Shown here: positions 19,370 to 40,510 of the stretch, piece after piece | Layout: every line of letters starts with the position of its first letter | Position numbering within the stretch: position 1 is the first letter of the stretch | Assembly (NCBI GenBank): GCA_001179505.1 | Contig: CDMY01000592.1 | Coordinates: 62,001 to 126,000, forward strand | Origin: Vitrella brassicaformis CCMP3155 | Lineage: Eukaryota; Protista; Chromerida | Direction: 5' to 3' | DNA length: 64,000 nt | Program-made: the position numbers and the translations under genes | The notes under the pieces: model-generated | What the model was told of the DNA's origin: nothing | Databases searched by the model: none | Seen by the model: the letters and a program-made list of their open reading frames with translations, nothing else

Positions 19370-20219
19370 GGGGATGGCTGCGGAACATCATCGCGGCATT
19401 CCCGCGCACAAAGGAGTACATCCTCGACAATTAGCCCGACAAGAAAGTCGACAACAACGACGGCAGCGGTGGTGGCAAGGGCAAGAATGCCCGATGGCTG
19501 CCCAACATAAGTGCGGCATTCCCGCGCACCCATCGGTGGCTCCTTGACAAGTTTCCACACACAATGGCCAAGCTCGGTCTGGTACGATGAATAGATAGAT
19601 ACCCACGTGAATTAGTGTATGCCTGTCTTATCTCCCTTATGTGCAGAGGCACCCGCCCCCCGAACGAGAGCAGGTGGCCCCACCATACCCGCCACCGCCG
19701 CCATCACACGCCACGGCCGGGACGCTGCCCAGGAGAAGGGCTTGGCTGCTTGGAACTTTCAAGAATACGGCCAAACACCTAGGACTGGTAGGATGCTGCA
19801 CACACATTGAAGCAACACCTGTTCACATGCAGTCTTCGCCGCTTCTGTGCCGTTCCGTCCCTCTGCAGAAAGTCCCGTCGCCGCCAGCCCTCGAGAGCGA
19901 TGTGACGACGCCAGTGAGGTGGACGCCACTATATATTATGCAATAAATCCGAACAGCCCCGTCAAGTGCCCCTGCCTGTGTCTCGCTGTGTGTGTATGTG
20001 TTTCAGACATGGCAGTATCCCATTGCTGTCTACATTTTATATTTCGTCAACTCCTTTTGCCTTCACCCGCGCATCCCACGAGATGGCGAAGCAAGAGAAG
20101 GATCATGGAAGGTGGTCGAACTGTGGGATACACTAGCGAATGGACTGTCTCTCCTTGTTTACGGGTGCCGTTTGTGTGTGGTCTTTTCTCTCTTCGTGTA
20201 TGTATGTGCTGTAGTGTGC

Positions 20220-20255
<36 letters not shown>

Positions 20256-22607
20256 TTGTGCGTATGTGTGTGTCAGTTTTGGGCGAGCTGTTGCCCCGAC
20301 CTTTTGGCCCCAGCGACCCCCCCACACCATGCCGACGCCGCCCAAACGAATCCCTCTCTCACGGTGCGGGGGGGAGGGGCCCGAGGATCGACGACCGCTT
20401 CGCCATGGTCCGATGGGTAAGTTTACAACACAGACAGACAGCAGAAGGCCAAAGCCCACCAAGCAACTTATTTACCTACTCTCTCGGCTTGGCTTGACGA
20501 CCTGTGTCCTGCACGTGTATGCCTGTGTTTGGTTCAGCACGCCCCGCACCACATCGACTCGGCAAGCCCCGACAACAAAGTCGACAACAACGACGGCAGC
20601 GGTGGTGGCAAGGGCAAGAATGCCCGATGGCTGCCCAACATATGTGCGGCATTCCCGCGCACCCACCGGTGGCTTCTGGACAAGTTTCCGAACACAACGG
20701 CTACGTTGGGCCTGGTAGGATGAATAGATAGATACCCACGTGAATTAGTCTGTCTTATCTCGTTATGTGCAGCGAAATCGGCCGCCCAAACCGAAGCAGG
20801 CGCCGCCATATCCGCCACCACCGCCTTCCAACTCGACCGGGCCGCTGCCAAGGACGAGGAAATTTCTGCTCTCCACATTCAAAAATACGGCAAAACAACT
20901 GGCATTGGTAGGATGCTGCACATACATTGAAGGAACACTCCTGTGCCGTTCCGACCTTCCCATCACAGGCGCCAGCACCAGCATCTCCATCGCCCCAGCA
21001 GCAGATGACCCCGCCCAGCCAGCCGCCCCCACCTCCTTCGCCCCCACCACCACCACCCCCGCCCAAGACCAACGCCACGGGCCCAACGACTGGTACGAGG
21101 GAGGAGCCAAGACGGTGACGACTGTGATTGTGTTTGCTGTGTTACAATTTGTATGTTTGTATGTTTGTTGATTGCAATGCATGCAGGCAAGTCGTATAGC
21201 GACACGGTGAAGGACAGCGTCGTCAAGGAGGGCCCGGCAGGGGCAGCGCCGGTAGCTGCCACACTACCCAAGGTCAGAGAGAGAGTGAAGTGAGCTGAGT
21301 GAGGCGACATGTCCATCAGCCGATGGTTGCAAGAGCAAGACGACCCGATGGCTGGGAATATTCCCACGCACACAGAAGTACCTGCTCGACAATTTTCCAC
21401 ACACAATGGCAAACTTGGGCCTGGTACGATGAATAGATAGATACCCACGTGAATTGGTTTATGCCTGTCTTATCTCCCCTATGTGCAGAGGGAGCCGCCG
21501 CCCGAACGAGAGCAGGCGGCGCCCTACCCGCCACCACCGCCATCATCACAGACCGCCGCCAAGCCGCTGCCCACGGACCACAGCTTTCCTTCTCTCAACA
21601 TTCAAAAATACGGCGAAACATCTGAAATTGGTAGGATGCTGTACACACATTGAAGCAACACTCCAGAAGCAAGAATGGCCTTGCAACTGTGGATCATCAT
21701 TGGCTGCATCCATCGTGTTGCATCAGGACTCGACGTCGATGGACAGCCCTCTGCAGGCCACCCACACACTCGCATCGCCAGCACCAGCACCAGCACTCGC
21801 TGAACCACAGGCCGCCGATGGAGACCAAAGGCAAGGGGGAGCTACAGCAGATGCCGCCATGGACGCGCCACCTGCACCTGCAGGTCCAGAAGAAGCCGTA
21901 GAGGGCCAGCAGGCACCGGCCACAGGCACTGCTGCGGCAATGGAGGTGGAGGACGACCAACAGCAGCAGCGGTGGCGCGGCCTCGAGGCCCGACGTTTTG
22001 GCCCCAACGAGCCCCCCGACCCCCTGCCGACAAAGCCGCGAAGAGTCCCCATCTTGCCGCCGCCCGAGACGGTGCTGTCTGCCGTGGGTGCGGGGGGAAG
22101 GGGGCAGCAGCAGCCGCCGCAACAGCCACACCCACAGCCACAGCAGCAGCCACAGCCACAGCCACAGCAGCAGCCACAGCCTGCCGCCGTCAAAGGTACG
22201 CACACACACACACATGCACACACATCCCCCGCAACACAGCCATCTCTCCACCTGTCCATGCGTGTGTGTATGTCTCTCTCTCTCTGTGTGTGCGCCTCTC
22301 CCTCCCCCCTCCCCCTCTCACCCATTGCCTCACGTCAGCCATGGTAGAGTATTGGCTGAAGCAACAGGAGGCTCGGGCCGCCCAGCACCGGGAGGATCTG
22401 GCACAGCAGCAGCAGCATCACCGGCAGCAGATACGGCAGATGATGCAGCAGCAGGCCGAGATGCAGCAGCAGATGCTGGAGCAGCAGCAGGCGCTGCTCA
22501 GGCAGCACCCAATCTTCTCACGCCACTTTTCCAACCGGGGTATGTACCACACACATGCTCACAGACAGATGGACAGGCGGACGGACAGGCATGAGAGCGG
22601 GACTGTT

Positions 22608-22647
<40 letters not shown>

Positions 22648-25153
22648 TATGTGTCGGATTGCAGACGTCCAGGCCACCAGCGTACGCAGATGACTACATA
22701 AGACACGACGTCACACCAGGAGAGCTTATGTATGTCCTCTCTTTATCGCTGTATGTGTCCATGCAGCCAACGTCGGATGCGTCGGCTCAGGACGAGCGCA
22801 AGGTAAACCTCACACACATCCACCCACTCACTCACTCACTCACAACATGGCCACATCCATCCAAGTGCACCTGCCTGCGTCTGTGTGTGGGTTGTGTGTG
22901 TGCAGGTCGGTTCGGTTCCATGTAGGCCGACATACATGTCCTGTGTTCACAGATAGACAAGTGAGAGTTCTCTGTTTTTGCAGATCGCCGTCTACATTTT
23001 ATATTCGTCGGCACATCTCAACATCGATGCGCTGCCCCCTTCGCCCTCCCATTACATTACGGAGTCGCCATCTGGCTACATCTGGCTGCATCCTGCGAGT
23101 GGGCAGCGTGAGAAGGACCAAGACACTGCAATCCAATCGGTGTGCACACACCCAATGTGTCTGTTGCTGGTGTGCAGATCGTTGTCTACATGTTATATTT
23201 GACCGACTGATGACGACACTTCACCCGCACCGCCTTGGCTCGCCGTGTGCGCATCAAAGGTAAGCTGTCAAAATAGACTGATCGACTCCACTGGTATGTG
23301 TCTCGCGTCTGTGTCTTCAGAGCGATCGGTGTCTACATGTTATATCCTGTGGGCCCCTTCTACTTGATCCAAGATTGGCTGCTGTGCATCAGTGAGTTTA
23401 TCCCCGGCGGCCCCACAGGTGCGTGCGTAAGTGAGAGGCAAAAGAAGAGGCTCATCAACAAGAGCCCATGTCTCCTTTTCTTCTCCGTTTTTGTCTCCGC
23501 ATCTTTGGTGAATGACGAGGCCGATTGGTGAATGACGACAAAGATACCGTACCATATGGCCGAGACCACCCGACCTCGCCAGCAACCCCCCGACACCCTG
23601 CCGACGAAGCCGCGAAGAATTCCTCTCTCGCCGCCCGGGACGGTGCTGCGTGACGTGGGTTGCGAGGGGTATGTGAAGCTGTCAAGCTACGTCACGTGTC
23701 TGTGTGTCCAGGTCGATCGCTGTCTCCGTTTTATATCCGTGGACCTCTCCTTCTCAATTGCCGATGCACCTCATCTAAAAGCGCTTTGAAATAAATTCCT
23801 AGTAGAGGAACAACAGAAGAGACTCGTGAACATTTGCTCATGTCTCCTCTTTTCTCTGTTCGTCTCCGCATAATTGGCCGCTCCGGCGGCCCCCGAGAGA
23901 TCTATCTGCCAAGTGCCCGCTGGCGGCCTTTCATCGCGGCTCATGGCGGGCGACAGAGGTGCCGTTCTGAACGGCACCATTTCGCATAGCGATGCGATGG
24001 CTTGGAGAGATCATTGCGGCATTCCCGCCCACGCAGCAGTACCTCCACGACAATTTCCCAAGAACGACGGCCACGTTGGGCCTGGTACGATGAATAGATA
24101 GATACCCACGTGAATTGGTTTATGCCTGTCTTATCTCCTTTATGTGCAGAGGGAGCCCCCCCCAAACCAGAGCAGGCGGCACCCTACTCGCCACCACCGC
24201 CATCATCACAGACCGCCGCCAAGCCGCTGCCACGGACCACAGCTTTCCTTCTCTCAACATTCAAGAATACGGCGAAACATCTGAAATTGGTAGGATGCTG
24301 CACACACATTGAAGCAACACTCCAGAAGCAAGAATGGCCTTGCAACTGTGGATCATCATTGGCTGCATCCATCGTGTTGCATCAGGACTCGACGTCGACG
24401 ACTCCCTTCCTGTGTTCGGCATCGAGCCGCCCGAGCAAGCCCGTCGGCCGCTCGTCAAAGGGCACGCCCGTGCGCACACCGACCATGCCCACACCCACAT
24501 CGCACACACAAAAGGCCGGCCCCACACCATCGCCCCTGCCTCAGCCCGGCAGCAAACTGACCCCTCCCAGCAGAAAGGCCCTTTCGCCACACGAAGCGGC
24601 AAGGGTGCTCCTGCCGCCGCCGCCGCTGCTGCCGCTGCTAGTGGTGCCGCTGTGTCGCCTGTGATAGGGCCGTTGATGGAGTTTCCAGGGCGGAAGACGT
24701 CTAGACGACCCTCGTGTAAGGGAGGGAGACATGGGGGAGAGACAGATAGAAAAGATGTGTCGGTGTGCGGTGTGGTATGGGGGTGGGGATGCAATGGGTG
24801 CAGTTGGTGTGGCCGTCATGCCGGATGCCATTCCGCCCTCGATGCTCAAACGGCACATCGGTACCACACCACACGCAAGCCCGTCTGTCCCTCTCTCTCT
24901 CTCTCTCTCTCTCTCCCATACTCATCTGTCAATATGTGGACTCGGCAGACAACAACGACGGCAGCGGTGGTGGCAAGGGCAAGAATGCCCGATGGCTGCC
25001 CAACATATGTGCGGCATTCCCGCGCACCCATCGGTGGCTTCTCGACAGGTTTCCGAACACAACGGCCACGTTGGGCCTGGTACGATGAATAGATAGATAC
25101 CCACGTCAATTAGTGTATGTATGCCTGTCTTATCTCCCCTATGTGCAGAAAAA
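19370..25153 (+). repeat. Patchwork array of duplicated exon-intron modules (A/B motif pairs and other modules), partly pseudogenic
   Basis: Five copies of intron GTACGATGAATAGATAGATACCCACGT...TATGTGCAG start at 19582, 20715, 21424, 24085 and 25080. Each follows an exon ending FPRT..[WY]LLD.FP.T.A.LGL and precedes an exon encoding PYPPPPP...LPRT..[FW]LL.TFKNTAK.L.L (the last is cut by the gap). There is a premature TAG at 19432 and a +1 indel near 21570. Confidence 0.85.
24426..25153 (+). repeat. Segmental duplicate of the formin 3' region (38253-38981)
   Basis: Colinear and highly similar, but with substitutions and indels, e.g. ccacacgaagcggcaagg versus ccacccgaagacggcaagg. Runs into a gap. 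Confidence 0.9.
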
Positions 25154-25453
25154 NNNNNNNNNNNNNNNNNNNNNNNNNNNNNNNNNNNNNNNNNNNNNNN
25201 NNNNNNNNNNNNNNNNNNNNNNNNNNNNNNNNNNNNNNNNNNNNNNNNNNNNNNNNNNNNNNNNNNNNNNNNNNNNNNNNNNNNNNNNNNNNNNNNNNNN
25301 NNNNNNNNNNNNNNNNNNNNNNNNNNNNNNNNNNNNNNNNNNNNNNNNNNNNNNNNNNNNNNNNNNNNNNNNNNNNNNNNNNNNNNNNNNNNNNNNNNNN
25401 NNNNNNNNNNNNNNNNNNNNNNNNNNNNNNNNNNNNNNNNNNNNNNNNNNNNN
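25154..25453. other. Assembly gap (300 N)
   Basis: Run of N. Confidence 1.
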
Positions 25454-27341
25454 TACGCGTCAGGTTCTGGTGTGGACAGCCACGCGTGCCACAGGGCATT
25501 CCACTGCCAGAACTACTTCCTCAAGATCGACGCCCGTGACGGAGTCGAGAGGATCAGGGCCACCATACAGGGGCTGCAGCTGGGATGAGCTTCAGGCCGT
25601 CGGGCTGTTTGCTAAGCTGGCGGGTGATAAAGTGTCTATCGCCGCGTTGTACAGTGGCGGCGGTGGACGAGGAGGGTGCCGGGCTGGCTGTGTACACACA
25701 TGTTTGTGCTTGTCTATACGTGCGACTGACTGGGGGGCTGTCTCACGATGAATCGATCCATCGATCCATGGTAAGCAGGCAGGCAGGCAGGAGACTGCCT
25801 GACTGTGGTGTGCAGATGTGTGTGAGGCGGTGTGTTCTTTGCCGAGTCGGATCAAGGACGACTCATGTGCTGTGAGTGGGGTTATCCCGTGTAGTAAGTT
25901 TGCCTGCCAAGGCCTCCATCAGTCAGTGGCTTGTTCCATAATCCCAATTGGGAAGGTCTGGTCAGCTCACGCCACAGACACAAACACGGCAGTGACCGAC
26001 GACAGACAAGACGGCACACACAGACGAAAGCAGCACACACCATCAGACGCCGGAGGAACTGTGCCCTGCTGATCCAATCGTCCACCGACAGCGCCAGATG
26101 CGGCCCACTCGAAAGACAGTGAGTGAGCGAGAGACCGCAGCAAAGATGATAATTCCCAGTCCGCCATCCACCAGACCCGGCGCAATAGTCATCCTGCCGC
26201 AAGCAACGACAGACAGACAGACATGGAGTGAGTGAGACGGTCAGTCAGTCCGCTGGCTTCCGATCTATAATTGCCCTTACCTGCACGGTCCGCCGGGCAG
26301 TGACATGTCTGAGCATCTGGCGAGAAGCCCGATGCAAGGATGACACACCATGAGTTCAACGCTATCAGCTTCAGACAATTTGCACGCCCGATATCGCACC
26401 GATGATGAGCCGCTCTCGCTCTCGAGACTACTCCAGCGATACACACAAGTGCCAGTTTGAAGACAAACTTTATCTTGAGCTGCTGGTCGCCAAGAACGAC
26501 GGTGTCCCTCGCCGCATCATTGTTGTTGATCACACACTCGGGCAGCTCATCGGCCAGGCTTTCGAACGATCTGCTCTCTGACCTGCTGCTGGACCGACGC
26601 AAGCGTCAACGAGCCAGAGCCACCCAAAGAGTCCAGGACATTAGCACCCACGATTGTGGCGTAGGCGTTGATCTGCCGGCGCTTCTCGCTGCGGTTGCCG
26701 CAGTGTCCGGGCGACACATTTGGGGAGTCAGAGGGCGACCAGCAAGGCCAGGACGAGATGAATGTGCACCCACACAGACACGCACTCAACTGACTACTGC
26801 ATGGTTTCCATCCATCAGTGTACCACGGCGGTGAAGAGAGCGGAGTACCCCTCTTCCCCTGTAAAGCCACAGAGAAGTCCATTCATCCATCCTGTGAAGT
26901 GCCTCGGGCAGTCCACTGACCTGCAACACCCAACAGATGGCACACAAAGGGACAGAGAAATGAATCGCTGACTGCAGATCTCTGTGCAGCTCGTGATTGT
27001 GCGGTGCAGGGGGGTGATGTGGCGAGCTGGATGTGCCTCTTTTTCGTGGTGTTTGAGTTGTGTGCGCGTTACACGACGTTACGTTATACCGACGCCTGCC
27101 CTAACGCCCAATCTCCGCGCGGGAGAGAGAGAGAGAGAGGAAGAAAGGCAGCAGAGAGACTCACAAACGCACACAGGATGGCGACCAACACGCAGCCAGA
27201 AGGGCTCTCACTGCATCAGCTGACTTTTCTCTCTCTCTGTTCTGTGAAGCCGCCGTGATTTGGCTCCCGAGCTCACTTACCACACAGCGGATCAGCAACA
27301 GCGGCCTTCAAGCATCGCGTCTATTCGCACGGCTCACAGGC

Positions 27342-28795
27342 ATGAGGCCGCCCACGTCTGTCAGCGCCCCTCCTCCCGCCACGGCTGATCCCCCAGACAC
27401 AGACGTCCTCAGACAATCAGCTTCTGAATTGGACGTCTCGACGACAAGGTCAGCGAAGTCATCGAAGCATCAACCAAAGGCTCAAGGAGATGGCGAAGGC
27501 GGCGCTCGGCTCTCAGGCGTGTCCACCACCGTCTCGACATCGGTCTCCACCCCTGCAGTGGACGGCCGGGCTCCGCTTGGCGACGGGGATTTCGGCTGAG
27601 GAGGGCGATCTGTGGGGCTTTCTGGTGCTGCGGATTGGCTGTGTGACCTTGTGGCTGACGGACTACCCTCTGAGGCATTTCCTGCTCATCATCGGCCTCC
27701 TCCTGATCTATGCACTGTGGTCGTGGGGTGGTTTTAGTTTTATCTACTACCTTCTCGTTATCCTTGGGTATGCGAGGAGTTTGTTATTCGCTCCCGTGAT
27801 TCCCTTTGTGATTGTGATATGGACACCGCCGTCGCTGATGCTCTTGATTGGATTGGGAAGTCTGTGCGCGCCGCCTCTTTGGTGGGGCACTCGATGGCTC
27901 GTCTATTTCTCTATCGTTCTGACCATTGTCTATTCCGGGTTCATGTACTTATTCGCGGTTTCTAATTATCTCACTATGTCCGTTGAAAGCGATACCTTCG
28001 GTATGCGCTTCGGCGCACTGGCGTGGCTGGCTGGAGGGGCCCTTCTCCAGTTGGCTCTCTTCATTGTCATCTCGGAGCCGCGGCTCATCCGTGCATCGAC
28101 CAGCCCGACGGGTGGAAGGGAAATCGACGTCGATCACAACCGGCTCTCATGCTGCGGCCGTCGGGCAGAGTGGAGACCCTCGGCGACGGCCGAGTGGATA
28201 GCCAAGGCCCGGCAAACAGAGCCCTTCCTCTACCGCTCGGTGACCAAGCGGTGGCTCAAACGGATGGACTATCTCACCTTCATTCGGTTGTATAAACTGC
28301 TGGCCGTCGTGGGGATGGCCGTGGACTTCATTACCGATGCGGCGGTGGGGTTTCAAATGATCACCGGGCTTCCAGAAAGGCTATGGGGTCGTGCAAGATC
28401 CATCTGTATGGTCGATGGCAAATATCCGTGGAGTGATTATGAAAGGGAATGCATGGATACCACGATGAGCCGTCTGAAAAGTGAAGCGCAAGGCTATGGA
28501 GTTGTTGGCTTTGTCATCCTGGGCCTATCGCTGGCCGACTTCATATCGCTGTTCATTCACTACGGCATCCGCGGCTCTCCCTCAGTATGCCAGCACATCT
28601 AGATTGTCGCCTTTGCCCTCCTGGAAGTGCCCATCTTGGTGCTGAGAATTGTGTGGGCGATGGAGGCCAGCAATCCGACGGTCTTCATCGTATCTGCCTT
28701 CTTCACTCTGGTGACGGTTCTCTCTCGAGTCGGGTCGTTTGCGTGGAGCATGTCTATGCGGCGAAAGAGTGGATTGTCGACCGACTCTCAAGAGG
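27342..28795 (+). pseudogene. Intronless multi-pass membrane protein paralogue, disrupted
   Basis: Colinear with 47530-48870. A 1-nt frameshift near 27590 separates the leader MRPPTSVSAPP...LGDGD from AEEGDLWGFLVLRIG. A premature TAG at 28600-28602 replaces TGC in the paralogue, and homology resumes at IVAFALLEVPILVL. Confidence 0.8.
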
Positions 28796-30598
28796 TGAGA
28801 AGAGGAGGGAATGAGGACGTTGTGTGTCATTCCTCGTTGTCTTGTTTACTATGCACCAGGGAGCTCCATCGGTCGTGTGATGGACGGCACATTCTTGGGC
28901 ACTTGGAAGTGCTTGGGCGAAGTATGGTACTTCCTGCTGCTGCTGCTGATGGGACTGACAAGTGGCCGGCTGTCTGTTATCCTTCCAGTCAATCAGACAG
29001 GGAGGAAGGGAGCCAAACGATCGGTGGATTCCACCGCCAGCCGCAGGACCGAAGTGGCTGTGCGTACGGATCTACGGCTGTATACATGTGTGTGCAGCTC
29101 CATGCATGTCAGTCACGTGCTTGTTTGCCTGTTGTAGCACGAAGGGATGTAGTTTCATGCCTTTCAGCTGCTTGTCTTGCCTTGAGCCCCTTTCTTTCTT
29201 CTGGCTCATCGACATGTTCGTGTGACTGACTTGTTTCGCTGGTCGATCTGTGTGTCTTTCTGGATGGACGGCCGGTGGCTGGAAAGCGTGGATGGTGGAC
29301 GGATGTGACCGTGATTGATGTCTTGACAGCGAAGGTGCTGATGGTGTGATGTGGTGTGCATTGAGTGTATGAGGGCAGCGACGGTCTGTGCGACGACAGA
29401 CAGACAGACATGCACCCAACTTGAATGCGGTCCCGCTTTCCTGCCTCCCTGTACGTCTGTCTGTCTGCCTGTCTGTCTGTCGAGGTTGCTGTGGGTGCTG
29501 CGTGGGTGGGCTGACGAAGGGATGTGCGTGCGTACGATGGATGCCATGCTTTGACTGACCGGCCAGATGCGATGCGTGTGTGATGTCATGTGTGTGAGCG
29601 AGACAGTGAATGAGTGGTGTCCGTCCACCCATTTCCTGGAATACTGAATTCAGTCAGTCAGTCACTCAGTCAGTCAGTCGTCCGCGTGTCGGTCTCACAT
29701 ACCATCGGCAATCCACGAAGGAAGTCCACCAACAAGGAAGCAGCCAGCCGTATGCACACACACACACACACACACACGCCATTTCGCACATGCATCCACA
29801 CACGCAGCCATGGCCGAAGGGGCGCCTTATGTGTGTGGGTGTCTGTCTGTGTCTCATCCATCCATCCATCCGCTAATCCTGCCTGCGTGGCAACGTGGCT
29901 GGATGTTTGTGGGTCTGTCTGTCTGTGTGTGTATTGGTCTGTCTGTTCCATCGGCGTCACTCACCGGACAAAGGCAGTCAGTCAGTCATGGATCGGATGG
30001 ACGAGAGAGGTCAGTCATGAAAGCATGAACCGAGAAAGAGAGACACACACGGGCGGGGTGGATGGGTGGATGATGGGTGGAGCCGAGAAAAAGAAAGGGA
30101 GGCGCTGTGTGTGTGTGTAGTGTTGGCTGGTGTGGCGCTGAATGGATGGACGGACGTGAGGTAGAAGAAGGTCCTTGCTGCCTGCCCTGCTCTCCTCCCT
30201 CTCTCGTACTTGCACACAAACTGCCTCGGTCGATGTGATGTATCTGTGTGGGTGTTGGTGGTGGCTAACCTTTCTCTCTCTCTCTCTCTCTCTCTGTCCC
30301 AGGAAGAAACAAAACCAGTGAGAGAGTTCCTGTCATCCAATCCACACAACACGAACGGGCAGACAGACGACTGCAACACACAACGAACTCCCATGCTCAC
30401 AAGCAGCGCTGCACGACAGCCAACCAGCCTGACAGTGAGTGAGGCAGGCAGCCATGGGATCTCTCCACACACAATCACACACTCATTCATTCATTCAGTC
30501 GCCAATCCATCCATACTCCCCCCCCCGTCGGTGTGCTGCGTGTGTGGTGTGTAGTATGGAGTGTGTGTGTGTGATGGTGTGATGGTGTGATGGTCTGT

Positions 30599-33500
30599 CT
30601 ACTTGGCGCGGCCATCGCGGTCGCGCTTCTTGCCCTTGGACATGTGGGCGTAGTTGATGGGCTCCTGGCCCTTGTCCCGCTTCTCCCGCAGACGGGGCGA
30701 CACGCGCAGCCCCACCCCCTCCCCTCCGCCCCCGGCAGCCTGGTTGTTGCCCTGCGTGGGGCCACGACGGCCACGGCGGCCCCTGGAGCCACCGCCACCG
30801 CCCCCAGCAGCAGCAGCGGCGGCGGCGGCCGGTGCGGGGCCGTCGTCGACGTCCATGTCGTCGTTGTCATGGTTGTCGGGGAGGCCGTAGTCCACCTGGG
30901 GGAAGGGCGGGTTCGGCGGCATCACAGGAAACCCTACATGGATGGACGCACAGAGAGAGAGGGGGAGAGGGGGGGATGGGGTGGTGGGTGAGTCTCTCTC
31001 TCTGTGTCTCTCTCTCTGTGTGTGTATGGGTGTGTGGTGGGTGTGCGGTGGTTTGGGTGGTTTGTGTCTCCTCTACCATACGCAATACGTACCCTCAGGA
31101 TAGTTGGCCTGCACCTCGCCCAGGAAGTGCTGATACCTGCACACACGAACAAACGAACCAACGACAAGACCACACGACCACCACCACCACCACCACCACA
31201 ACAACAGACATGTTATGTTCGTGTGCCCATCCATCCCTTTGCCTGTCCTCACTCCTCCCTCACTGGTCGCTTACTGAGTCTTGTCAACGATGTCGAAGAA
31301 GGGATGGTACAACGCCTGCACAGCCGTGATGCGACGATCCGGCTGGTACGTCAACATGCTGACGCAACCAACACACAACCACAGCCACATCACACACATG
31401 ACCCCCACACACCACACCCCTCCGCCCCCCTGTGTGTGTGTCTGCTGCGTCTGCCCACCGAGTGAAGAGATCCACGGCCAGCGAGTTGCGGTCGATGTCG
31501 GTGCGGCCGTAGGGGCGGTACCCGGCGGCCTGGGAGATGGAGTCGTGGCTGCGGCGCAGCAGCGCCGTGATGCCGTCACGCGGGTCGCGCACAAACTTGG
31601 GGAAACGCTGTACACACACACACACGCGCAGAGAGAGAGAGAGATGAATGAGTTGTGTTGTGTTGTGTGTGAGGGGGGCACATTGAACTGGTCGGCGTAG
31701 GTGAACGCTTCGCTGCCCGGCCAGATGGCGTTGGTGGGGGTGCCCAGCGTGTTGAGCATCTTCATCAACGTCTCAAACTGACAGAAAGGTGGCAACAGAG
31801 ACACACAGGCAGATGGGCACACAGGCAGACGAGTGTGTGTGGTTTTTGGAGGTGCTGCGCACCTCAGTGTGGGCGTTGAAGGCCGGCATGCCGCTCGTCA
31901 ACTCTATGAAGATGCACCCAGTGGACCTGACGACGGCACATGACACACACACACCAGAATTGCACAGGCCCCCTCCGTCCCCCTCTCTCCATCCATCCCT
32001 CTCAACCCCCTCTCTCCCCCTCCCTCTCTCTGAGTGTTGTGTCTTTTGTCGGCTGACTGACCAGATGTCCAGGGCATAGGTGTACTTGAAGTTGGCCGGT
32101 CCCATGAACAACTCGGGCGGGCGGTACCTGCACACACACGAACACGCACATAGAGAGAGACACTGCTGAATGCACTGTGCGATGCTCTCTGTATGTGTGT
32201 GAGGGTGTGAGGGTGTAGGTGTTGAGTTGTGTGCTCACCACTGAGTGGCCACCTCGTGCGACATCAACTTATTCGGAATCGTCACCGTGCGAGCCAAACC
32301 TGGGGAGTGAATACACCACACACACATGGATGGATGGATGGACAGATCTGTGTGTTGCCACGGTGTGTGCGGTAGCTGACCGAAGTCGGCGATTTTGACG
32401 ATCCAGTCGGTGGTCATGAGGATGTTCTGCGGTTTCAGGTCACGGTGGATGACTGCACACACACACACACGCATACACACACACACAGGTACATCAGTAC
32501 ATGGCTGTGGATGGAAGAATGGTTGGTATGGTATGGTGTGTGCCATAGTGTCAGAGTGGCGTACGTCCTTTGCAGTGCATGTAGGCGATGCCGTTGAGTA
32601 TCTGGTACATCACGCGGGCCAACTGCTCCAGCGTCGGCACTGCACACACACACACACATACAAACCAACACGTGAGCCCCTGTCCCTCCCCCTCTCCCTC
32701 TCCCTCTCCCATGTGTTGTCATTGTGTGTGTGCGTACCTGTGTTCATGGGGAGTAGTTTGTTTGGGTTCCAGTGGGGGTGATTGATCTTGTTCTCCTTGG
32801 CACAGATGGTACGGAGGCGTCCGACGTCGCCGGCCTCGCACAGCTCGAAGATGAGGTACACGATGGTGGCCATGGGGTCCGAGGGGTCCATGCCGACCTT
32901 GTGGAGGGTGACGATGTTCATGTGGCCCCTCAACGCCATCAACGCATTCACCTGACACACACACACACACGGGGAAAGATGGCGGGGACGTGGGGGAGAT
33001 GACTTTGTTGTGGTGCGTCGTGTTGTGTGTGGGATTGCGTGTGGTCCAGGCCTCACCTCGCGCATCGTGGTGGATTCTATGCCTTCGCCCCCGTTCCACT
33101 TCTTCATCTGCACACAACACATCACACCATATCACACCGCACCGCGTGCACACACATGAAGAGATGCCATTGTCACCATGCATTCCCTCTCGGGATGATC
33201 AGTCAGTGGCGTGGTTACCTACCTTCTTGATGGCCAGGGGTGTGCCCTCGGGGACCTCAGTCAACGTGCGATTCGTCACGGCAGCTACACAGCCATACGT
33301 TCCTGCACACCAACAGAATACGCAGACAGAGGGAAAGGAAAAAAGAGTTACGCAATGGAGAGCGTCAAGAATATGCCGATGCATCCAGCCACGCGTCCAC
33401 GCATCCACACAGAGCAAAATGCACCATCCATCCGATGCATCCGACGCATTCCATCCCGGCTCCCTCAGTGCATATCACGTCCCACGCCGTGTCTCAGGCT

Positions 33501-33631
33501 TCCCCGGCTCTTTTGACCCTCCCTCTCGTCTCTTTGGGCTCACCTGATCCGAGCATACGGACGAAGTTGAAATTCTGGACCACATAGGGGTCGTGCTCCA
33601 TGTCGTTGGACTGCGCAAGGGCCTGCGCCAT
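30599..33631 (-). CDS. Cyclin-dependent kinase-like (cdc2-related, CMGC) protein kinase
   Basis: Spliced motifs: LGSGTYGCV, LAIKK, EGIESTTMREV (PSTAIRE position), VIHRDLKPQNIL, KIADFGLAR, HEVATQWYRPPE, ALDIWS, LGTPTNAIWPG, RITAVQALYHPFF. Two further exons extend to the stop at 30599. Confidence 0.93.
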
Positions 33632-33825
33632 CCTCAACAAACCAACAACTCGCAGAAGCCTTCTATACGGCCTTTTAGGCGGCTGATCGCGATACCGATC
33701 AGGCGGCCATACCCAGAGAGCGATGCAAAGGCCGCACAAGGACAACTCCAAACCAACTCCAAAACTGCCCCCAGCTCGCACAAACCCTGCGTTTACATCA
33801 AACCCCAGCGCAGTGAGTGAGGGAG

Positions 33826-36800
33826 ATGGCGGCCATGAGAGCTGACGGTAAGGCCGGCCAGCAGCAGCAAGAAGGGGAAGATGCCGAGGAAGATCTCCCC
33901 TCCCTCACGCCGCGCACTGCCACGCGGGAGCTGGATGAAGAGCGGGAGCGGCGGCGGAGGGCCGAGGTGCGGACGGAGCAGCTGAGCCGCTTTATCAAAC
34001 AGGCCGAGGCCGACGCCAAGAAGCGCGAGACCACCAACCGCCAGCTCGAGGCCGATCGGGACAACTGGAAGCGGAAGTGGAAGACCGAACTGGACAGAAT
34101 GCACAAGTAGGATAGATACACTGATGCAGGGAAGGTCCCTCTCTGTGCGCATGGAGGATGTGCGCGAGAATCTGACGGCGTGTGTGTTGTGTTGCTGGTT
34201 TTCGTGTGTGCAGGTTGCAGGCTGAGAGTGCGCGTCAGGTGGAGGCGGTGCAGCGGGACCTTCAGGGGCAGGTGGAGGCACTGCAAAAGCTACACACACA
34301 CAGGTGCATGCGGTCGCACAGCACTGCACGGGAGGGGAAGGCCGCGATTCTCCCTGAGCTTCTTCTGTCGTCCATGATGGTTGCGTGTCATTGTTCCTTG
34401 CCCCATTCTCTGTCTGCAGGGACCGTAACAGCCAACTCAGCCACCTGCTCAGGGTCAAGGATAGCACACAAGAACGGTACATGACACACACGCCACGCCA
34501 AGAGGGAGAAAGAAGAGATCCGACCACCACAATCCATGAGTGCCCCTGTTCCTTTGTTTCTTTGTTCTGTCAGCTTGGAGGCCGAGATCCACCGGCTGCA
34601 GGACCTCGTAAGCCCTACCACCACACACAACACACACGACACGATCCATCCTCTATGCTTCTCTGTCGCTCGATCAGCTCTCACACCAGACCAACACCAA
34701 CCCCGACACAAAGAGTGCCGAGAAAGCTCCAATTACCCCCCTCTCTCCCCCTCCCCCGCCCCCCGTCCACATCCCTCCCGAGGCCACACCGGCCTTCCAG
34801 GCCCTCAAAGCCGAGTACGATAGGACCCTCTCGTTCATCACAGGCACTCTGGGGCTGCCGGGCCCTCCGCAGCTGTACCAGTGGAGAGGCACCGTCACTC
34901 ACACAGGGGAGGGAGAGGGCAAAGGGTCATCGCAACAGCAGATTGGAGAGGGTGGTGGTGCGCCGGAGCCCTCTTCGGCAGATGGCGGCGTGCAGGCTGC
35001 TGCTGCTGCGGCTGCGGAGGCAAAGGGCAAGGCCGCACCGCCCAAAGGTGAGCAGTGGGTGGATTCAATGCGCTGGATGGACCCGTGTCGTGTGTTCTCT
35101 CCCTTCTACCTCAGGTCCTCCGCCAAAGTTCTCCGGCGCCCGTCCACCCAAGCTCCCATCGGTCAAGGCCCCCCCACCACCGCCCAAACATCCAGCTGGC
35201 GGCAAACGAGCCCCTCCCATCAGCAAGTCGGCAGACGCCGCCAACCGAGGCAAGAAGGCGCCCATGTCCGAGTGCGTCAACATCCAGTGGGGGACGGCGG
35301 GGGGCGCACCCCCGAGGGCCGACGTGGGCACAGAGGAGATATTGCGGCTGCAGCAGCAGGCTAAGTTCTCACAGGCTGGTGTCGGAGGAGGTCACAGTGG
35401 GGGCAAGGAGGAGGGCAGCGGCAAACATGCTGGTGGGGGTGGGGGTGGCGCTGGGGTTGGGAGTGGGGCTGGTACATCGGCTAAGGGTGGTCGGATGAGT
35501 GTGGGCGGGGCTGGGGCTGGCGGTGGCGCTGCTGGTGTGGGTGAGAAGGGGAGGGTGGTTGTGGATTTTGACCAGACGGTGAGGGACTTCCCCGAGGCTG
35601 TAGCCGCCCGACAGAGGTACGTATGTCTGTCTGTCGTCTGCGTAAGAGCGGTGGGTGGGTGATCCACGTCTGCATCATCATCTGTGCATCCGTATACACC
35701 ATCCATGTGTGCAGTTTGACGAAGCGCCAGCTCAACCCCATCACGCCATCCAGTACCGACGGGCGGGACGACACAGCCACACCATCTGACTGACTGACTA
35801 CGCGCTCTATGTGTGATGGTGTCGGTCGTGTCAGTCTTCGATTTGGACGAGGAGGGCGAGCGGCTGATGCAGGGCGTAGCGCAGGACCCGCGGCTCGTGG
35901 AACTCTTCAAACGAAAACCCACCAAGGCAGACAACGCACTACACACCACACCTCTTTCGCCTCAGACAAACACATGCATGCCTTTCTTTTTTTCTGCACA
36001 CTCAGGCTGCCCCTGATTCGTTTGCCGCTGGAGGGGCCAAGCCGCAGCGGTCGTCATGCCTCACCGACAAGGGACAGAAGCGATACGGTCGGCACACTCA
36101 TTCCCCCACCCCTCCCAAACAACACACCCGTGTTTCCACAGAGTGAGAGAGAGGTGTCTGTATGGTTGTGTGTGTGTGTGTGTGTGTGCAGAGGTAGCCC
36201 GTCAGCGCATCGCAATGACGGTTACGGCCCGTCTGCGGGGGTGCATGTCGAGCCGCGAGCACCCCCACTGGCTGCATGAGTTCAAGCGCCTGTTCCTCGA
36301 GTGTAACCTGGAGTTCCTCAACAAGGAGCTCATCAACTCACTCATGTGACAAGAGACACACACACACACACACGCATCTATGTGCTTCGGGGGCGTGTTG
36401 TAGGGATGCTGTGCCGAAGGATGAAGACATAGCGGCCGTGCTGCAGTACAAACAGGTGGGAGTCTGTCTGTCTGTCTGACCGTCGGCCTGCGCCTTATGC
36501 ATTCTGTCTCCTTCCCGCTCCCTCTATCATCGTCTCTGTATGTGTGAGTCTGTCAGGATCACCCGGGTGTGCCGCTGCTCGCTGCCGAGGAGTTCGTCTA
36601 CAACGTATGTGCGACGACCGACGCCACACACAAAGCTCGACACACACATCTGTGTGCCTTTGTGTGTGTGACTATGCGTCAGATGTCGACCATCCCGCGT
36701 CTGAAGGAGCGGCTGGAGTGCATGGCGTTCAAGCTGTACGCTGAGGACTCATTCAAGGAAACCATCCAGGTGCCCTCACACAGACAGAGATTCTCTTGTG

Positions 36801-39540
36801 TCCATTGGACGTACGCGCCTGGATGTGTGTATGTGTGCGCCAGTACATTGAGGACCAGCTGGCGGCTCTGGACATGCTGATGAAGAGCAAGAGGCTCCAC
36901 CACCTATTCCTCGTACTTACAGACACACACCCCTCCCCGTGTCATAGCTATGCGTCTGTGTGTGTGTGTGTAGGTGATAGTGGCGATCGGCAACAAGCTC
37001 AACGAGGGCACCACTCTCGGCAACAGACAGTGGTTCAGACTCAAAACACTCAAAATGGTGGGCAGGGCAGGCCAAAATACCCAAACAAACACCTGAATGA
37101 CATAGATGTACCCCTCCCCACCTGTGTGCAGTTGGGAGACACCAAGATGACCACGGCGGACAGGCGCGAGCGGCACGTGCTGCACTACCTCATCGAGACC
37201 TTCCCGTGGACGCGTAAGCCATCCGTGAACATACGACAGAAGAAGCAAGCCATCCGTCCATCCTTCCATCCATGTGAATGCCTTTGTGGCTGTGTGTGTG
37301 TGTGTGTGCAGGTGAGGTGTTGGATGAGAAGGACATGCGCATCCTCGCCAAGGCGCAGCAGCGTGCGTACCCCCCCCACACACACACACGGACGGCCGGC
37401 CGCACTTGTGGATGCATCTCTCTGTGTGTGTGTGTGTGTGTATGTGTGTCTGTGTGTGTCAGAGCACGTTGCGATGACCTACACGTTGGGCATGGACCAC
37501 ATCAACTCGTGGCTCGCCGTAGGCATCACAGCACTCGCCTATTCCCTCCCAGACATCTCACATCTTTCTTTCTTTCTCTCTGTCTGCCTGCACACCATCA
37601 ATCAGATCAAGGCAGAGTATCGGCAGGAGAGGCGGCGCAACTCCATGGCTCCCCACGAGGCCGACAAAAGGGACTGGTCAGTCAGCCCGTCAGTCAGCCG
37701 ACCAACCCTCTACCTCTCTCCCAACGCCTCCTTATGTGTGTTTGGTTTGCTCCATTCGTGTGTCAGTTTCCACCAGGTCATGGCCGACTTCCACAAGCGG
37801 AGCGTGTCGCAGGTCATCCAGATGGACCACAAGCTGGGCGAGCTCAGGGATGCCTACACGGCAGCCGTTCTCTACTTCGGCGACGTGCAGGGCTTCTTTC
37901 CTATAGATGCGGTGAGTGAGTGAGTCAGTACCACTCTCCTGGTCACCTGTGGTCTTCCACCCATGTGATTGTGCGTGTGTGTGTGTGTGTGATTGTGTGT
38001 GTGTGTGTGTGCAGAGGGGCGACGATCCCAACACGTGTAGCATGCGGCCGGACCTCTGCAAGACTGTCTACGACTTCCTCAAGGACCTCAGAAAAGCCGC
38101 ACACGACGTCAAGAAAGAGGAACAACACAAACAGGTAGGTGCCTTACCTTCCTGACACCCACGCCTCACATCACAACAACTAACCAACTCGTCCCTCTGT
38201 CTCTCTGCCGTGCAGGTCAAGAGGACCCCCACCGGCCCCCCTGACATCCCCCGCCGCCCGAGCAAGCCCGTCGGCCGCTCGTCAAAGGGCACCCCTGTGC
38301 GCACACCCACCATGCCCACACCCACATCGCACACACACAAGGCCGGCCCCACACCATCGCCCCTGCCTCAGCCCGGCAGCAAACTGACCCCTCCCAGCAG
38401 AAAGGCCCCTTCGCCACCCGAAGACGGCAAGGGTGCTCCTGCCGCCGCCGCTGCTAGTGGTGCTGCTAGTGGTGCTGCTGTGTCGCCTGTGTCGCCTGTG
38501 ATAGGGCCGTTGATGGAGTTTCCAGGGCGGAAGACGTCTAGACGACCCTCGTGTAAGGGAGACGTGGGGGGACAGACAGATAGAGAGATGCGTCTGTGTG
38601 TGGTGTGGGGGTGGGGATGCAATGGGTGCAGTTGGTGTGGCCGTCATGCCGGATGCCATTCCGCCCTCGATGCTCAAACGGCACATCGGTACCACACCAC
38701 ACGCAAGCCCGTCTGTCCCTCTCTCTCTCTCTCTCTCTCTCTCCCATACTCATCTGTCAATATGTGGACTCGGCAGACAACAACGACGGCAGCGGTGGTG
38801 GCAAGGGCAAGAATGCCCGATGGCTGCCCAACATATGTGCGGCATTCCCGCGCACCCATCGGTGGCTTCTCGACAGGTTTCCGAACACAACGGCCACGTT
38901 GGGCCTGGTACGATGAATAGATAGATACCCACGTCAATTAGTGTATGTATGCCTGTCTTATCTCCCCTATGTGCAGAAAAAACCGCCGCCTAAACCGGAG
39001 CAGGCGGCGCCCTACCCGCCACCACCACCAGCATCCCACGCCACGGCCGGGCCGCTGCCAAGGACGAGAGCATTTCTGCTCGCAACGTTCAAACAAACGG
39101 CCAAACATCTAAAATTGGTAGGATGCTGCACACACATTGAAGCAACACTCCAGAAGCAAGAATGGCCTTGCAACTGTGGATCATCATTGGCTGCATCCAT
39201 CGTGTTGCATCAGGACTCGACGTCGACGACGCCGCCCGAAGCGGAGCAGGTGGCGCAGCAGAGCACCCTGTGGCCGCACACAAAGAAGTACGTCCTCAAG
39301 AATTTCCCAAGAACCACGGCAAAGCTCGGCATGGTACGATGAATAGATAGATACCCACGTGAATTAGTGTATGCCTGCCTTATCTCCCTTATGTGCAGAG
39401 GCACCCGCCGCCCGAACGAGAGCAGGTGGCACCACCATACCCACCACCACCGCCATCGTCTTCAACCGCCGCTGCCACGAACGAGAGCATTCCTACTCTC
39501 AACGTTCAAGCAGACGGCAGCCCAGCTGCGCAACGACTGA
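33826..39540 (+). CDS. Formin (coiled-coil N-terminus, short FH1-like Pro-rich segment, FH2 domain) with a C-terminal extension of repeated motif exons
   Basis: FH2-like exons: ECVNIQW, AAEEFVYN/MSTIPRLKERLECMAFK, VIVAIGNKLNEGTTLG, FRLKTLKM/LGDTK, HVLHYL, KLGELRDAYTAAVLYFGD, TVYDFLKDLRKAAHDV. The FH2 call is firm; the 3' end after 38552 is inferred from frame-compatible GT-AG splicing. Confidence 0.85.
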
Positions 39541-39579
39541 AATGTGTGTGGTGTGTGTGTGTGTGGTTGTTGCAACCAG

Positions 39580-40510
39580 TCACAGGGCGGGTCAGCCAAT
39601 GAGAGCTCGGGGGAAACTCCGTGCTCTATGGTGTCGTACGACGAGGAAGCTGCACACGGATTTGGCGGCGAGGCCGACAATGGCAGAGCAGGAGTGTCTG
39701 ATGCCGCGAGTACGGAGCATACGGACTCCAACCACGAGCTGATGGATCTCGAGATCCGAGAATCGGACAAGCCGAGAATCGACAAGGAGCCTCCGCGCGT
39801 CTCACTAAGGTCAGCCTGCCACAGACATGCACACACATACCCACAAAGATACAAGTGCGTTTGCAGGTACAAAGACGGACATGAGTACCGTGGCACCTTC
39901 AACGAACTGATTCGGCTCCTGGCTGTGTACGAAAAGCAGACCAAGGAGTCACAAGCACAGGTGGGCGGTGGGTAAGCACATCACCTGGGCTGGTCTCTTT
40001 GTGAGAGTGTGTGTGATATGTATGTGCAGACCAACATCACTGTTCGTTGGGAGGTTACACCGAACGGTCGCCGCACGGCCAACTTTCGCCTCCGCAAGGC
40101 CGAGACCGACGTGCGCTCCGTCGTAGGCAACGAAGTCAGAATCAAATACACTTACGACGGTACGTACGGAGGCATTCCCTCCACACACGTGTGCGCAAGA
40201 TGGTACGGTTGTGCGCTGTGTCAGATGGTGAGGTGTGGATGCGGGAGGGCCACGTCTGTGTATGTCTCTCTCTCTCTCTCTGTGTGCGCGCCCCTCCCTC
40301 CCCCCTCCCCCTCTCCCATGCCTCACGTCAGCCATCATGGAGTATATGCAGCAGCAGCACGAGGCCCGGGCCGCCACGCACCGCGAGGAGATGGCCGACT
40401 TGAACCGCAAGCATCAGGAGGAGATACAGTGGATGATGCAGCAGCAGGCCCAGATGCAGCAGCAGATGCAGCAGCAGAAGGCCCTGCTCATGCAGCACCT
40501 ACAGCAGGCA
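39580..40510 (+). CDS. Hypothetical multi-exon protein or fragment ending in a Q-rich exon shared with 22339-22540
   Basis: Exon-like blocks GGSANESSGE...RVSLR, YKDGHEYRGTFNELIRLLAVYEKQ, TNITVRWEVTPNGRRTANFRLRK and AIMEYMQQQHEARAATHRE, separated by GT-AG introns. Start and end are uncertain. Confidence 0.45.

What the first reader, a model, noticed from the sequence alone, without database searches (positions are those of the whole stretch)
19370..39540. Unrecognised ~22-aa repeat motif encoded by shuffled phase-0 exon pairs
Seen: at least 13 exons end in [FLW]P[RHP]x..[WYF][LV]L..F[PK].T...L.[LM] directly followed by a phase-0 GT donor. Type A (e.g. AFPRTHRWLLDRFPNTTATLGL) and type B (e.g. 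PYPPPPP..GPLPRTRAFLLATFKQTAKHLKL) alternate as A-intron1-B-intron2 units near 19370, 20540, 21340, 23990, 24950 (cut by the gap), 38777 and 39216. The two intron types start alike (GTACGATG / GTAGGATG), implying A and B share an ancestor. B exons are phase 0 at both ends, so they can be added or removed without a frameshift. I recognise no known domain. Known analogue: exon-per-repeat shuffling in Ectocarpus ROCO-LRR and NB-ARC-TPR genes. Inference: a modular, recombining peptide-repeat system.
Basis: partly seen in the sequence, partly recalled or inferred. Interest (0 to 1): 0.82.

Follow-up and report, generated by a model that had tools for sequence, protein, structure and literature searches.

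The report
Shuffled two-exon motif cassettes in Vitrella
One stretch of the genome of the alga Vitrella brassicaformis holds about ten copies of a two-exon cassette encoding a short helix-forming peptide motif found nowhere else in public protein data; the copies were spread and re-paired by recombination inside near-identical introns, one gene carrying them is an actin-filament builder (a formin), and what the motif does is unknown.

Summary
The repeat is real. The window holds 7 A-type and 6 B-type motif copies in seven A-intron1-B-intron2 units, where shuffled sequence gives none. Three more units lie elsewhere on the same contig and none on other contigs, apart from a contig end that overlaps this one. 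The genome is Vitrella brassicaformis CCMP3155.

- **Coding:** A and B are variants of one motif (hhalign 91%). Nonsynonymous divergence is below synonymous, and conserved residues use 2-4 synonymous codons.
- **Novelty of the motif:** there is no Pfam, PDB or Rfam match. A profile search of 1.84 billion proteins found only three proteins, all annotated at this locus. One is an FH2 formin (CEM25070.1) with A-B-A-B after its FH2 domain.
- **Introns:** intron 1 differs by about 5% between copies, while synonymous sites differ by 39-49%.
- **Recombination:** site patterns show at least two exchanges at intron 1 (p 4e-13 and 2e-7).

Two B exons are 142 and 140 nt, B7 has a 5-nt deletion, and an upstream A copy is frameshifted. 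The unit at the gap has no B exon in the assembly.

Function is unknown. A WH2/DAD-like actin-binding role is only an analogy and failed the tests I could run. I found no independent transcript evidence.

The parts
19372..19434 (+). Truncated A copy (A0), running into a TAG stop at 19432-19434
   Evidence: Alignment; genome HMM hit with 1 TAG.
19435..19581 (+). A1 exon (open frame of 49 codons; core 19519-19581), followed by a GTACGATG donor
   Evidence: The annotated protein P0001 starts at the ATG inside it, at 19564.
19582..19646 (+). Intron 1 of unit 1 (65 nt)
   Evidence: It contains the 23-mer that is identical in all 9 clustered copies.
19647..19787 (+). B1 exon, 141 nt, phase 0 at both ends
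   Evidence: P0001 aa 7-53.
20538..20714 (+). A2 exon (59 codons)
   Evidence: P0001 aa 156-214.
20715..20772 (+). Intron 1 of unit 2 (58 nt)
20773..20907 (+). B2 exon, 135 nt, phase 0 at both ends
   Evidence: P0001 aa 215-259.
21320..21423 (+). A3 exon (core 21361-21423); the annotated model P0001 skips it
21424..21488 (+). Intron 1 of unit 3 (65 nt)
21489..21630 (+). B3 exon, 142 nt. A 1-nt insertion puts the motif out of frame with the acceptor, and P0001 reads it in the non-motif frame.
23995..24084 (+). A4 core region
24085..24149 (+). Intron 1 of unit 4 (65 nt)
24150..24289 (+). B4 exon, 140 nt, with a 1-nt deletion in a run of C. The motif is out of frame with the acceptor, and no database protein covers it.
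24290..24664 (+). Chimeric segment: intron 2, then the first ~17 nt of an A7-type exon, fused to a copy of the formin tail exon. It has 1-nt and 9-nt deletions and then a TGA. It looks like a pseudogene.
24948..25079 (+). A5 exon, with a core identical to A6
25080..25153 (+). Intron 1 of unit 5 plus 5 nt, cut by the assembly gap at 25154-25453. No B exon is in the assembly.
33826..40976 (+). Annotated gene for the FH2 protein CEM25070.1 (P0003, 1422 aa, about 34 exons). The FH2 domain is aa 544-838.
38219..38551 (+). Pro/Ser/Thr-rich tail exon after FH2, followed by a mini-exon at 38634-38687
   Evidence: The block 38253-38981 is duplicated at 24426-25153.
38776..38907 (+). A6 exon (P0003 aa 987-1030)
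38908..38976 (+). Intron 1 of unit 6 (69 nt)
38977..39117 (+). B6 exon, 141 nt, phase 0 at both ends (P0003 aa 1031-1077)
39118..39213 (+). Intron 2 of unit 6 (96 nt, open in frame)
39214..39333 (+). A7 exon, phase 0 at both ends (P0003 aa 1078-1117)
39334..39398 (+). Intron 1 of unit 7 (65 nt)
39399..39540 (+). B7: the polyproline part is in frame, but a 5-nt deletion puts the motif out of frame. In the motif frame it ends with a TGA. The annotation uses 39399-39503 in the non-motif frame and splices onward.

Best explanation
This is a species-restricted family of duplicated two-exon cassettes confined to one locus.

**Layout.** Exon A encodes a Gly/Asn-rich linker and then a motif of the form RWLPNIxAAFPRTxxWLLDxFPxTxAxLGL. 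A short intron follows. Exon B encodes a polyproline stretch (PYPPPPP) and then LPRTRAFLLSTFKNTAKHLKL. Both end in the same ancestral 21-residue motif, [FWL]P.[TR]..[WYF][LV]L..F[PK].T...L.[LM]. Its centre is predicted, at low confidence, to form a helix of about 10 residues whose hydrophobic residues recur at helical spacing, within otherwise disordered Pro-rich sequence.

**Shown.**
- The cassettes multiplied by tandem and segmental duplication along about 100 kb of one scaffold.
- They were re-paired by homologous exchange in or next to intron 1.
- Intron 1 is far more uniform between copies than the synonymous sites of the flanking exons.
- Public gene models place the cassettes in at least three genes: two orphan Gln-rich proteins and an FH2 formin, where A-B-A-B follows the FH2 domain.
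- A diverged unit sits upstream of a kinase-like exon.
- Four copies are frame-broken, and the segment 23990-25153 looks like a pseudogene.

**Inferred.**
- The intron stays uniform through repeated short gene conversion, seeded where identity is already highest. The same identity makes it the preferred crossover point.
- The motif is a short linear protein-binding element. Its position behind polyproline in a formin tail makes recruitment of profilin-actin or actin monomers the leading guess, at about 1 in 5.
For: - **Identity of the genome:** 72,700,666 bp in 1064 scaffolds equals the figures in PMC4501334. The source names of the proteins agree.
- **The motif is real:** 10 strict matches against 0 in 60 randomisations.
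- **A and B are homologous:**
- **Protein-level selection:** mean pS is 0.39 (A) and 0.49 (B) against pN 0.21 and 0.17. Conserved P, R, T, L and F columns each use 2-4 synonymous codons.
- **Uniform introns:** intron 1 differs by 0.05 on average. A 23-mer is exact in all 9 clustered copies and occurs nowhere else in the genome. The start of intron 2 behaves the same way.
- **Not ancient constraint:** in the diverged unit U10 the intron is only 64-72% identical to the others. This points to recent homogenisation.
- **Recombination:**, plus the chimeric junction at 24385.
- **Confinement:**
- **No relatives:** the 1.84-billion-protein profile search found only P0001-P0003.
- **Gene context:** FH2 at E 4.9e-32 in P0003, and exon maps.
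- **Helix prediction:** AF2 places short helices on the A6, B6 and A7 cores, at low confidence.
Against: - Four of about 19 copies are frame-broken: B3, B4, B7 and the second A copy upstream. Part of the array is therefore decaying or mis-assembled.
- No transcript-derived protein with these motifs turned up in the size ranges searched, and each 90% cluster has one member. Expression and splicing thus rest on gene prediction only.
- The link between formin and cassettes could be a merged gene model.
- Nothing supports the functional guess. The Pfam WH2 model does not match, and the Leu that corresponds to the LKKV box is not followed by a basic pair.
Confidence: 0.7

Rival explanations
1. The motif is an actin-monomer or autoregulatory element like WH2 or DAD. 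Each B exon would be a small polyproline-plus-helix unit that feeds profilin-actin or G-actin to the FH2 domain, and copy number would tune formin activity.
For: - The cassettes follow the FH2 domain in CEM25070.1.
- B exons start with PYPPPPP, a typical profilin-type track.
- The core has an LLxxF box in a predicted short helix. This matches the H region described for DAD and WH2 in PMC12871907.
Against: - The Pfam WH2 model matches none of the exons at E up to 10 and nothing in the whole genome.
- PDB sequence searches return no WH2 or DAD chain.
- The Leu after the helix is followed by K-L, G-L or G-M, not by a basic pair and then V or T. The spacing is also one residue longer than in INF2.
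- Most cassettes sit in proteins without an FH2 domain.
- P0003 has no recognised DID domain.
Confidence: 0.18
2. The array is mostly dead DNA: a recently duplicated and now decaying set of pseudo-exons, partly an assembly artefact near a gap. The gene models that string them together are prediction artefacts.
For: - Frameshifts in B3, B4, B7, the upstream A copy and the 24.6-kb tail-exon copy.
- A truncated A0 copy with a TAG.
- The gap at 25154, and near-identical blocks.
- The P0001 model starts inside A1 and skips A3.
- No transcript-derived proteins were found.
Against: - pN is below pS in both cores, and conserved residues use several synonymous codons.
- The motif pattern survives between A and B, and in the diverged U10 unit at about 50-65% DNA identity.
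- Six of nine complete B exons keep exact phase 0-0 lengths.
Confidence: 0.12
3. The selected unit is the intron itself. The 58-69-nt intron 1 would carry a functional element, such as a regulatory site (it contains CACGTG), a small RNA or a splicing control, and the exons would be secondary.
For: Intron 1 is 91-100% identical between copies, while synonymous sites differ by 39-49%. A 23-mer is exact in nine copies.
Against: - The predicted fold is not significant (z about -1.2).
- There is no Rfam match.
- The intron of the diverged unit U10 is as diverged as its exons, so there is no long-term constraint.
- The exons show their own protein-level constraint.
Confidence: 0.08
4. The cassette, or its intron, is a mobile element: an introner or a transposon fragment.
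For: Near-identical intron copies, and local duplications of intron plus exon start.
Against: All copies lie on one scaffold, in a few related genes. The larger open frames tested have no transposon protein domains.
Confidence: 0.02

Closest known systems
Exon-per-repeat shuffling in Ectocarpus ROCO-LRR and NB-ARC-TPR genes
   Same: One repeat per exon, and conserved intron phase at the repeat end. Recombinant combinations of repeat exons were shown here.
   Different: - The motif is a 21-residue helix-forming element in disordered sequence, not an LRR or TPR fold.
- There are about ten units at one locus rather than large dispersed families.
- Divergence indicates purifying, not diversifying, selection.
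- Several copies are frame-broken.
WH2 motifs and formin DAD / WH2-like tails (INF2, DAAM, mDia; PMC12871907)
   Same: A short helix with hydrophobic residues at helical spacing, containing an LLxx-hydrophobic box. It lies C-terminal to an FH2 domain, close to proline-rich sequence, with a Leu about ten residues downstream.
   Different: - There is no match to Pfam WH2.
- There is no basic dipeptide after the downstream Leu.
- Prolines sit inside the A version.
- The motif is repeated four times in the formin, and most copies lie in proteins without FH2.
- Binding is untested.
Formin FH1 polyproline tracks
   Same: A PYPPPPP stretch in each B exon, of the kind that binds profilin.
   Different: It lies after FH2 rather than before it, always paired with the helix motif. 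It also occurs in non-formin paralogues.
Concerted evolution or gene conversion in tandem gene families
   Same: Patches of near-identity between paralogues that otherwise differ, and mosaic copies.
   Different: The homogenised patch here is essentially the short intron and the start of intron 2. The flanking coding sequence stays diverged.

Membership tests
WH2 domain (Pfam PF02205) / formin WH2-like DAD | Match to the WH2 profile | tested here: not met
   hmmscan of nine A and B exons at E up to 10 gave no WH2 hit. PF02205 scanned over the whole genome gave no match at E up to 10.
WH2 domain (Pfam PF02205) / formin WH2-like DAD | N-terminal amphipathic helix with an LLxxL-type box (H region, as defined in PMC12871907) | tested here: met
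   The LL pair and F at +3 are conserved in 15-17 of 18 cores. AF2 places short helices on the cores, at pLDDT about 50-60.
WH2 domain (Pfam PF02205) / formin WH2-like DAD | LKKV box: an invariant Leu, then a basic dipeptide, then V or T | tested here: not met
   The Leu at core position 19 is conserved in 17 of 18 copies but is followed by K-L, G-L, G-M or R-L.
WH2 domain (Pfam PF02205) / formin WH2-like DAD | Binds monomeric actin (WH2) or a DID domain (DAD) | tested here: inconclusive
   The one complex prediction, with Vitrella actin, gave no verdict. Pfam finds no DID or GBD domain in P0003. A binding assay is needed.
Formin (FH2, PF02181) | FH2 domain in the protein that carries units 6 and 7 | tested here: met
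   P0003 aa 544-838 matches at E 4.9e-32 and 111.9 bits. The FH2 exons map to about 36191-38137 and the cassettes to 38776-39503 of the same model. The model is a prediction.
Exon-shuffled repeat modules (symmetric-phase cassettes) | One repeat per exon, with the same intron phase at both ends | tested here: inconclusive
   B1, B2, B6 and three B exons outside the window are 135 or 141 nt. B3 is 142 nt, B4 is 140 nt, and B7 has a 5-nt deletion. A exons end in phase 0 but start in varying phases.
Exon-shuffled repeat modules (symmetric-phase cassettes) | Mosaic copies that show exchange between units | tested here: met
   In U1, informative sites favour U2 over U9 by 28:4 on the A side and U9 over U2 by 40:3 on the B side (p 4e-13). 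U4 gives p 2e-7.
Introner or transposable element | Copies dispersed in unrelated genes across the genome, or transposon protein domains | tested here: not met
   All DNA, profile and intron-pattern hits lie on scaffold C592, plus the overlapping end of C318. No transposon domains were found.

The most novel reading that the evidence does not exclude
The cassette is a new kind of actin-assembly module. Each A-B pair would be a self-contained unit of polyproline plus helix that recruits profilin-actin or G-actin behind the FH2 domain, and that other proteins also use. The near-identical introns would act as built-in adapters, letting recombination add, remove or swap units and so tune the proteins quickly within the species.
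Probability: 0.1. Interest if true: 0.7.

Novelty: new member of a known kind. Interest (0 to 1): 0.38.

Why it matters
- **A clean natural example of exon shuffling.** In a free-living relative of apicomplexan parasites, both the breakpoints (at a short intron) and the substrate (introns kept nearly identical while exons diverge) are visible in one locus. This bears on how new repeat proteins are assembled, and on why some introns are more conserved than the neighbouring coding sequence.
- **A pointer for cytoskeleton work.** A chromerid formin is annotated with an unusual tail after FH2. If the motif turned out to bind actin or profilin-actin, it would be a new actin-binding element in alveolates.
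- **Limits on the impact.** The family is confined to one locus of one species, part of it is decaying, and its function is unknown.

Tried and rejected
- **Pfam.** Large open frames and each A or B exon gave nothing relevant.
- **Rfam.** A scan of 19-40 kb gave no family.
- **Folding of intron 1.** The structure is not significant (z -0.6 to -1.3).
- **PDB sequence searches with both profiles.** Only chance hits appeared. One is an adenylate-kinase segment of the form WLLDGFPRT at E 0.37.
- **ESM Atlas look-alike search.** No usable hit.
- **FH2 scan of the genome in six frames.** It missed this formin because its FH2 domain is split into small exons. The domain was recovered through the annotated protein.
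- **The look-up of encoding contigs for P0001 and P0003.** Nothing is on record.
- **Word searches for transcript-derived relatives.** The ranges 91-290 aa and 304-968 aa returned only P0001 itself.
- **Literature search for the three accessions.** No paper mentions them.
- **Complex prediction.** Vitrella actin (P0015) with ATP and the B6 peptide (P0003 aa 1048-1085) scored 0.04 against a mark of 0.34. The tool's verdict is 'no answer', so this is neither support nor evidence against binding.
- **Structure prediction of P0003 aa 960-1160.** Mean pLDDT was 52, usable only for the positions of short helices.
- **P0004.** This ENA protein has six tandem repeats and matched the B profile at E 3.5e-5. 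I judged it a chance match amplified by repetition.
- **Joined model left out.** I did not build or search any spliced model of my own. Exons were searched one by one by reference, and the only spliced sequences used were the public proteins that the search returned.
Full report
**Source.** The window is G000:C592:62001-126000 of a genome of 72,700,666 bases in 1064 contigs. These are exactly the figures published for Vitrella brassicaformis CCMP3155 (PMC4501334). The proteins recovered from this locus carry that organism's name.

**Observation.**
- A regular expression for the motif gives 10 strict hits, all on the + strand. It gives none in 30 mononucleotide shuffles and 30 first-order Markov simulations.
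- With relaxed matching the window holds seven A cores, six B cores and one truncated A copy that ends in a TAG.
- Intron 1 is 58-69 nt with GT...AG ends, a pyrimidine tract and in-frame stops. Intron 2 starts with a conserved 31-mer.
- Twelve copies are followed at once by a GT donor. The last B is followed by a stop two codons later.
- B1, B2 and B6 are 141, 135 and 141 nt. B3 is 142 nt and B4 is 140 nt. B7 lacks 5 nt relative to its closest relatives. In these three the motif is out of frame with the conserved acceptor.

**The assembly gap.** The sequence left of the gap (24426-25153) is 94.7% identical to 38253-38981 and stops 5 nt into what would be a B exon. The sequence right of the gap resembles neither a cassette nor any of the three proteins. 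Continuity and frame across the gap are unknown, unit 5 is incomplete, and nothing below depends on it.

**Distribution in the genome.**
- DNA, A-profile, B-profile and intron-pattern searches find copies only on scaffold C592.
- These are the seven units of the window, two units about 5 kb upstream on the opposite strand (L003), and one diverged unit at the scaffold start (L004:1115-1402).
- The end of C318 duplicates that start and is probably an overlap or a second haplotype.

**Is it coding?**
- A and B profiles align over 24 columns ending at the donor, with probability 91% and E 1e-6. They are two versions of one motif.
- Between units U1-U9, mean synonymous difference is 0.39 (A core) and 0.49 (B core). 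Nonsynonymous difference is 0.21 and 0.17.
- The conserved Pro, Arg, Thr, Leu and Phe columns each use two to four synonymous codons.
- This is the signature of selection on the peptide. It does not indicate diversifying selection.

**Introns.**
- Intron 1 differs by only 0.05 on average between the same units.
- A 23-mer within it is exact in all nine clustered copies and absent from the rest of the genome. The first 31 nt of intron 2 behave alike.
- The predicted fold is not significant, and no Rfam family matches.
- In the diverged unit U10 the intron is only 64-72% identical to the others, comparable to the B core (57-73%) though above the A exon (43-51%). The uniformity is therefore recent homogenisation within the cluster rather than ancient constraint.
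The numbers here confirm it.

**Recombination.**
- Segment-wise identity matrices are incongruent. U1's A exon is 87-88% identical to U2, U5 and U6 and 60% to U9, while its B exon is 95-97% identical to U9 and 70-77% to the others. U3 and U4 share intron 1 and B (94-98%) but not A (59%).
- Triplet informative-site counts switch sides at the 3' end of the A exon or in intron 1. For U1 the counts are 28:4 against 3:40 (Fisher p 4e-13). For U4 the test gives p 2e-7.
- A third event is visible at 24385. Intron 2 and the first ~17 nt of an A7-type exon are joined there to a copy of the formin tail exon, which carries 1-nt and 9-nt deletions.
- My reading, which is an inference, is that short conversion tracts keep the introns alike. 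That identity then makes them the preferred crossover site, so A and B exons are re-paired.

**Relatives and gene context.**
- A B-exon profile searched against 1.84 billion representative proteins found four proteins at E up to 0.001.
- Three come from this scaffold: CEM25063.1 (553 aa), CEM25051.1 (347 aa) and CEM25070.1 (1422 aa). The fourth is an unrelated tandem-repeat protein that I judge a chance match.
- CEM25070.1 has an FH2 domain (E 4.9e-32) at residues 544-838 and a UPF1-1B-like segment at 1258-1318.
- Its exons map to 33826-40976. They run through the FH2 exons, a Pro/Ser/Thr-rich tail exon, a mini-exon, then A6, B6, A7 and the in-frame part of B7, and then splice onward.
- CEM25063.1 maps to 19564-22690. 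It starts inside A1, contains B1, A2 and B2, skips A3 and reads B3 in the non-motif frame.
- The three proteins also share a Gln-rich C-terminal segment.
- The diverged unit U10 precedes a kinase-like exon.
- The models are Augustus predictions that used RNA-seq intron evidence genome-wide. I could not inspect reads.
- Word searches found no transcript-derived proteins with these motifs between 91 and 968 aa, and each 90% cluster has a single member.

**Function.**
- No Pfam, PDB-sequence or Atlas match exists.
- AF2 on residues 960-1160 of the formin is low-confidence (pLDDT 52) but puts short helices on the A6, B6 and A7 cores.
- The layout of a polyproline track, then an LLxxF helix, then a conserved Leu, sitting behind an FH2 domain, recalls the WH2 and DAD elements of formin tails as described in PMC12871907.
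- The membership tests fail, however. The WH2 profile does not match the exons or anything in the genome, and the Leu is not followed by a basic pair.
- I therefore hold the actin-related role as an analogy, at roughly 1 in 5. More generally I regard the motif as a short linear binding element in disordered tails.

**Comparison and verdict.**
- The layout is a known kind: exon-per-repeat cassettes spread by tandem duplication and shuffled through introns. The motif itself is new to the databases and is confined to one locus of one species.
- It is not a mobile element.
- Part of the array (B3, B4, B7, an upstream A copy, and the 24-kb segment) is frame-broken. This is either decay or sequence error.
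- I rate it a new member of a known kind, of moderate interest. The best features are the sharply intron-limited homogenisation and the demonstrable breakpoints.

I built no joined exon model of my own. The only spliced sequences used were the public proteins that the search returned.

Noticed in passing
L004:1115-3243 (G000:C592:1115-3243): The most diverged A-B unit lies upstream of an exon with a kinase-like catalytic-loop sequence (weak PF06293 hit, E 0.003). The cassette therefore also occurs next to a third kind of domain.
   Followed up: partly
L004:1403-1500 and L004:1996-2100: The intron-2-like sequence and the start of the following exon are duplicated about 600 bp downstream within the same gene.
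   Followed up: no
L005 (G000:C318:119000-123214) against L004:1-1300: The end of scaffold C318 is nearly identical to the start of C592, including the diverged A exon, with a few substitutions. It is probably an assembly overlap or a second haplotype.
   Followed up: partly
window 39868-40190 (P0003 aa 1258-1318): The formin model contains a segment matching the UPF1 helicase 1B domain (PF18141, E 1.3e-9), downstream of the cassettes. This is an odd partner for a formin and may mean the gene model is merged.
   Followed up: no
window 22262-22509 and 40258-40499: The Gln-rich C-terminal segment shared by the three cassette proteins is 81.7% identical at the DNA level between these two places.
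   Followed up: partly
window 27412-28767 against 47510-48841; window 50820-51432 against 53503-54109: Further local duplications (79.8% and 96.1% identity) unrelated to the cassettes. The second pair lies beside other assembly gaps.
   Followed up: no
window 39118-39213: Intron 2 of unit 6 is 96 nt and open in frame, so retaining it would keep the reading frame. Intron 1, by contrast, has a TGA at its third codon.
   Followed up: no
A cores, for example window 38845-38907: The A motif resembles the WLLDGFPRT segment of adenylate kinases in PDB searches (E 0.37-2). I judged this a chance match.
   Followed up: partly
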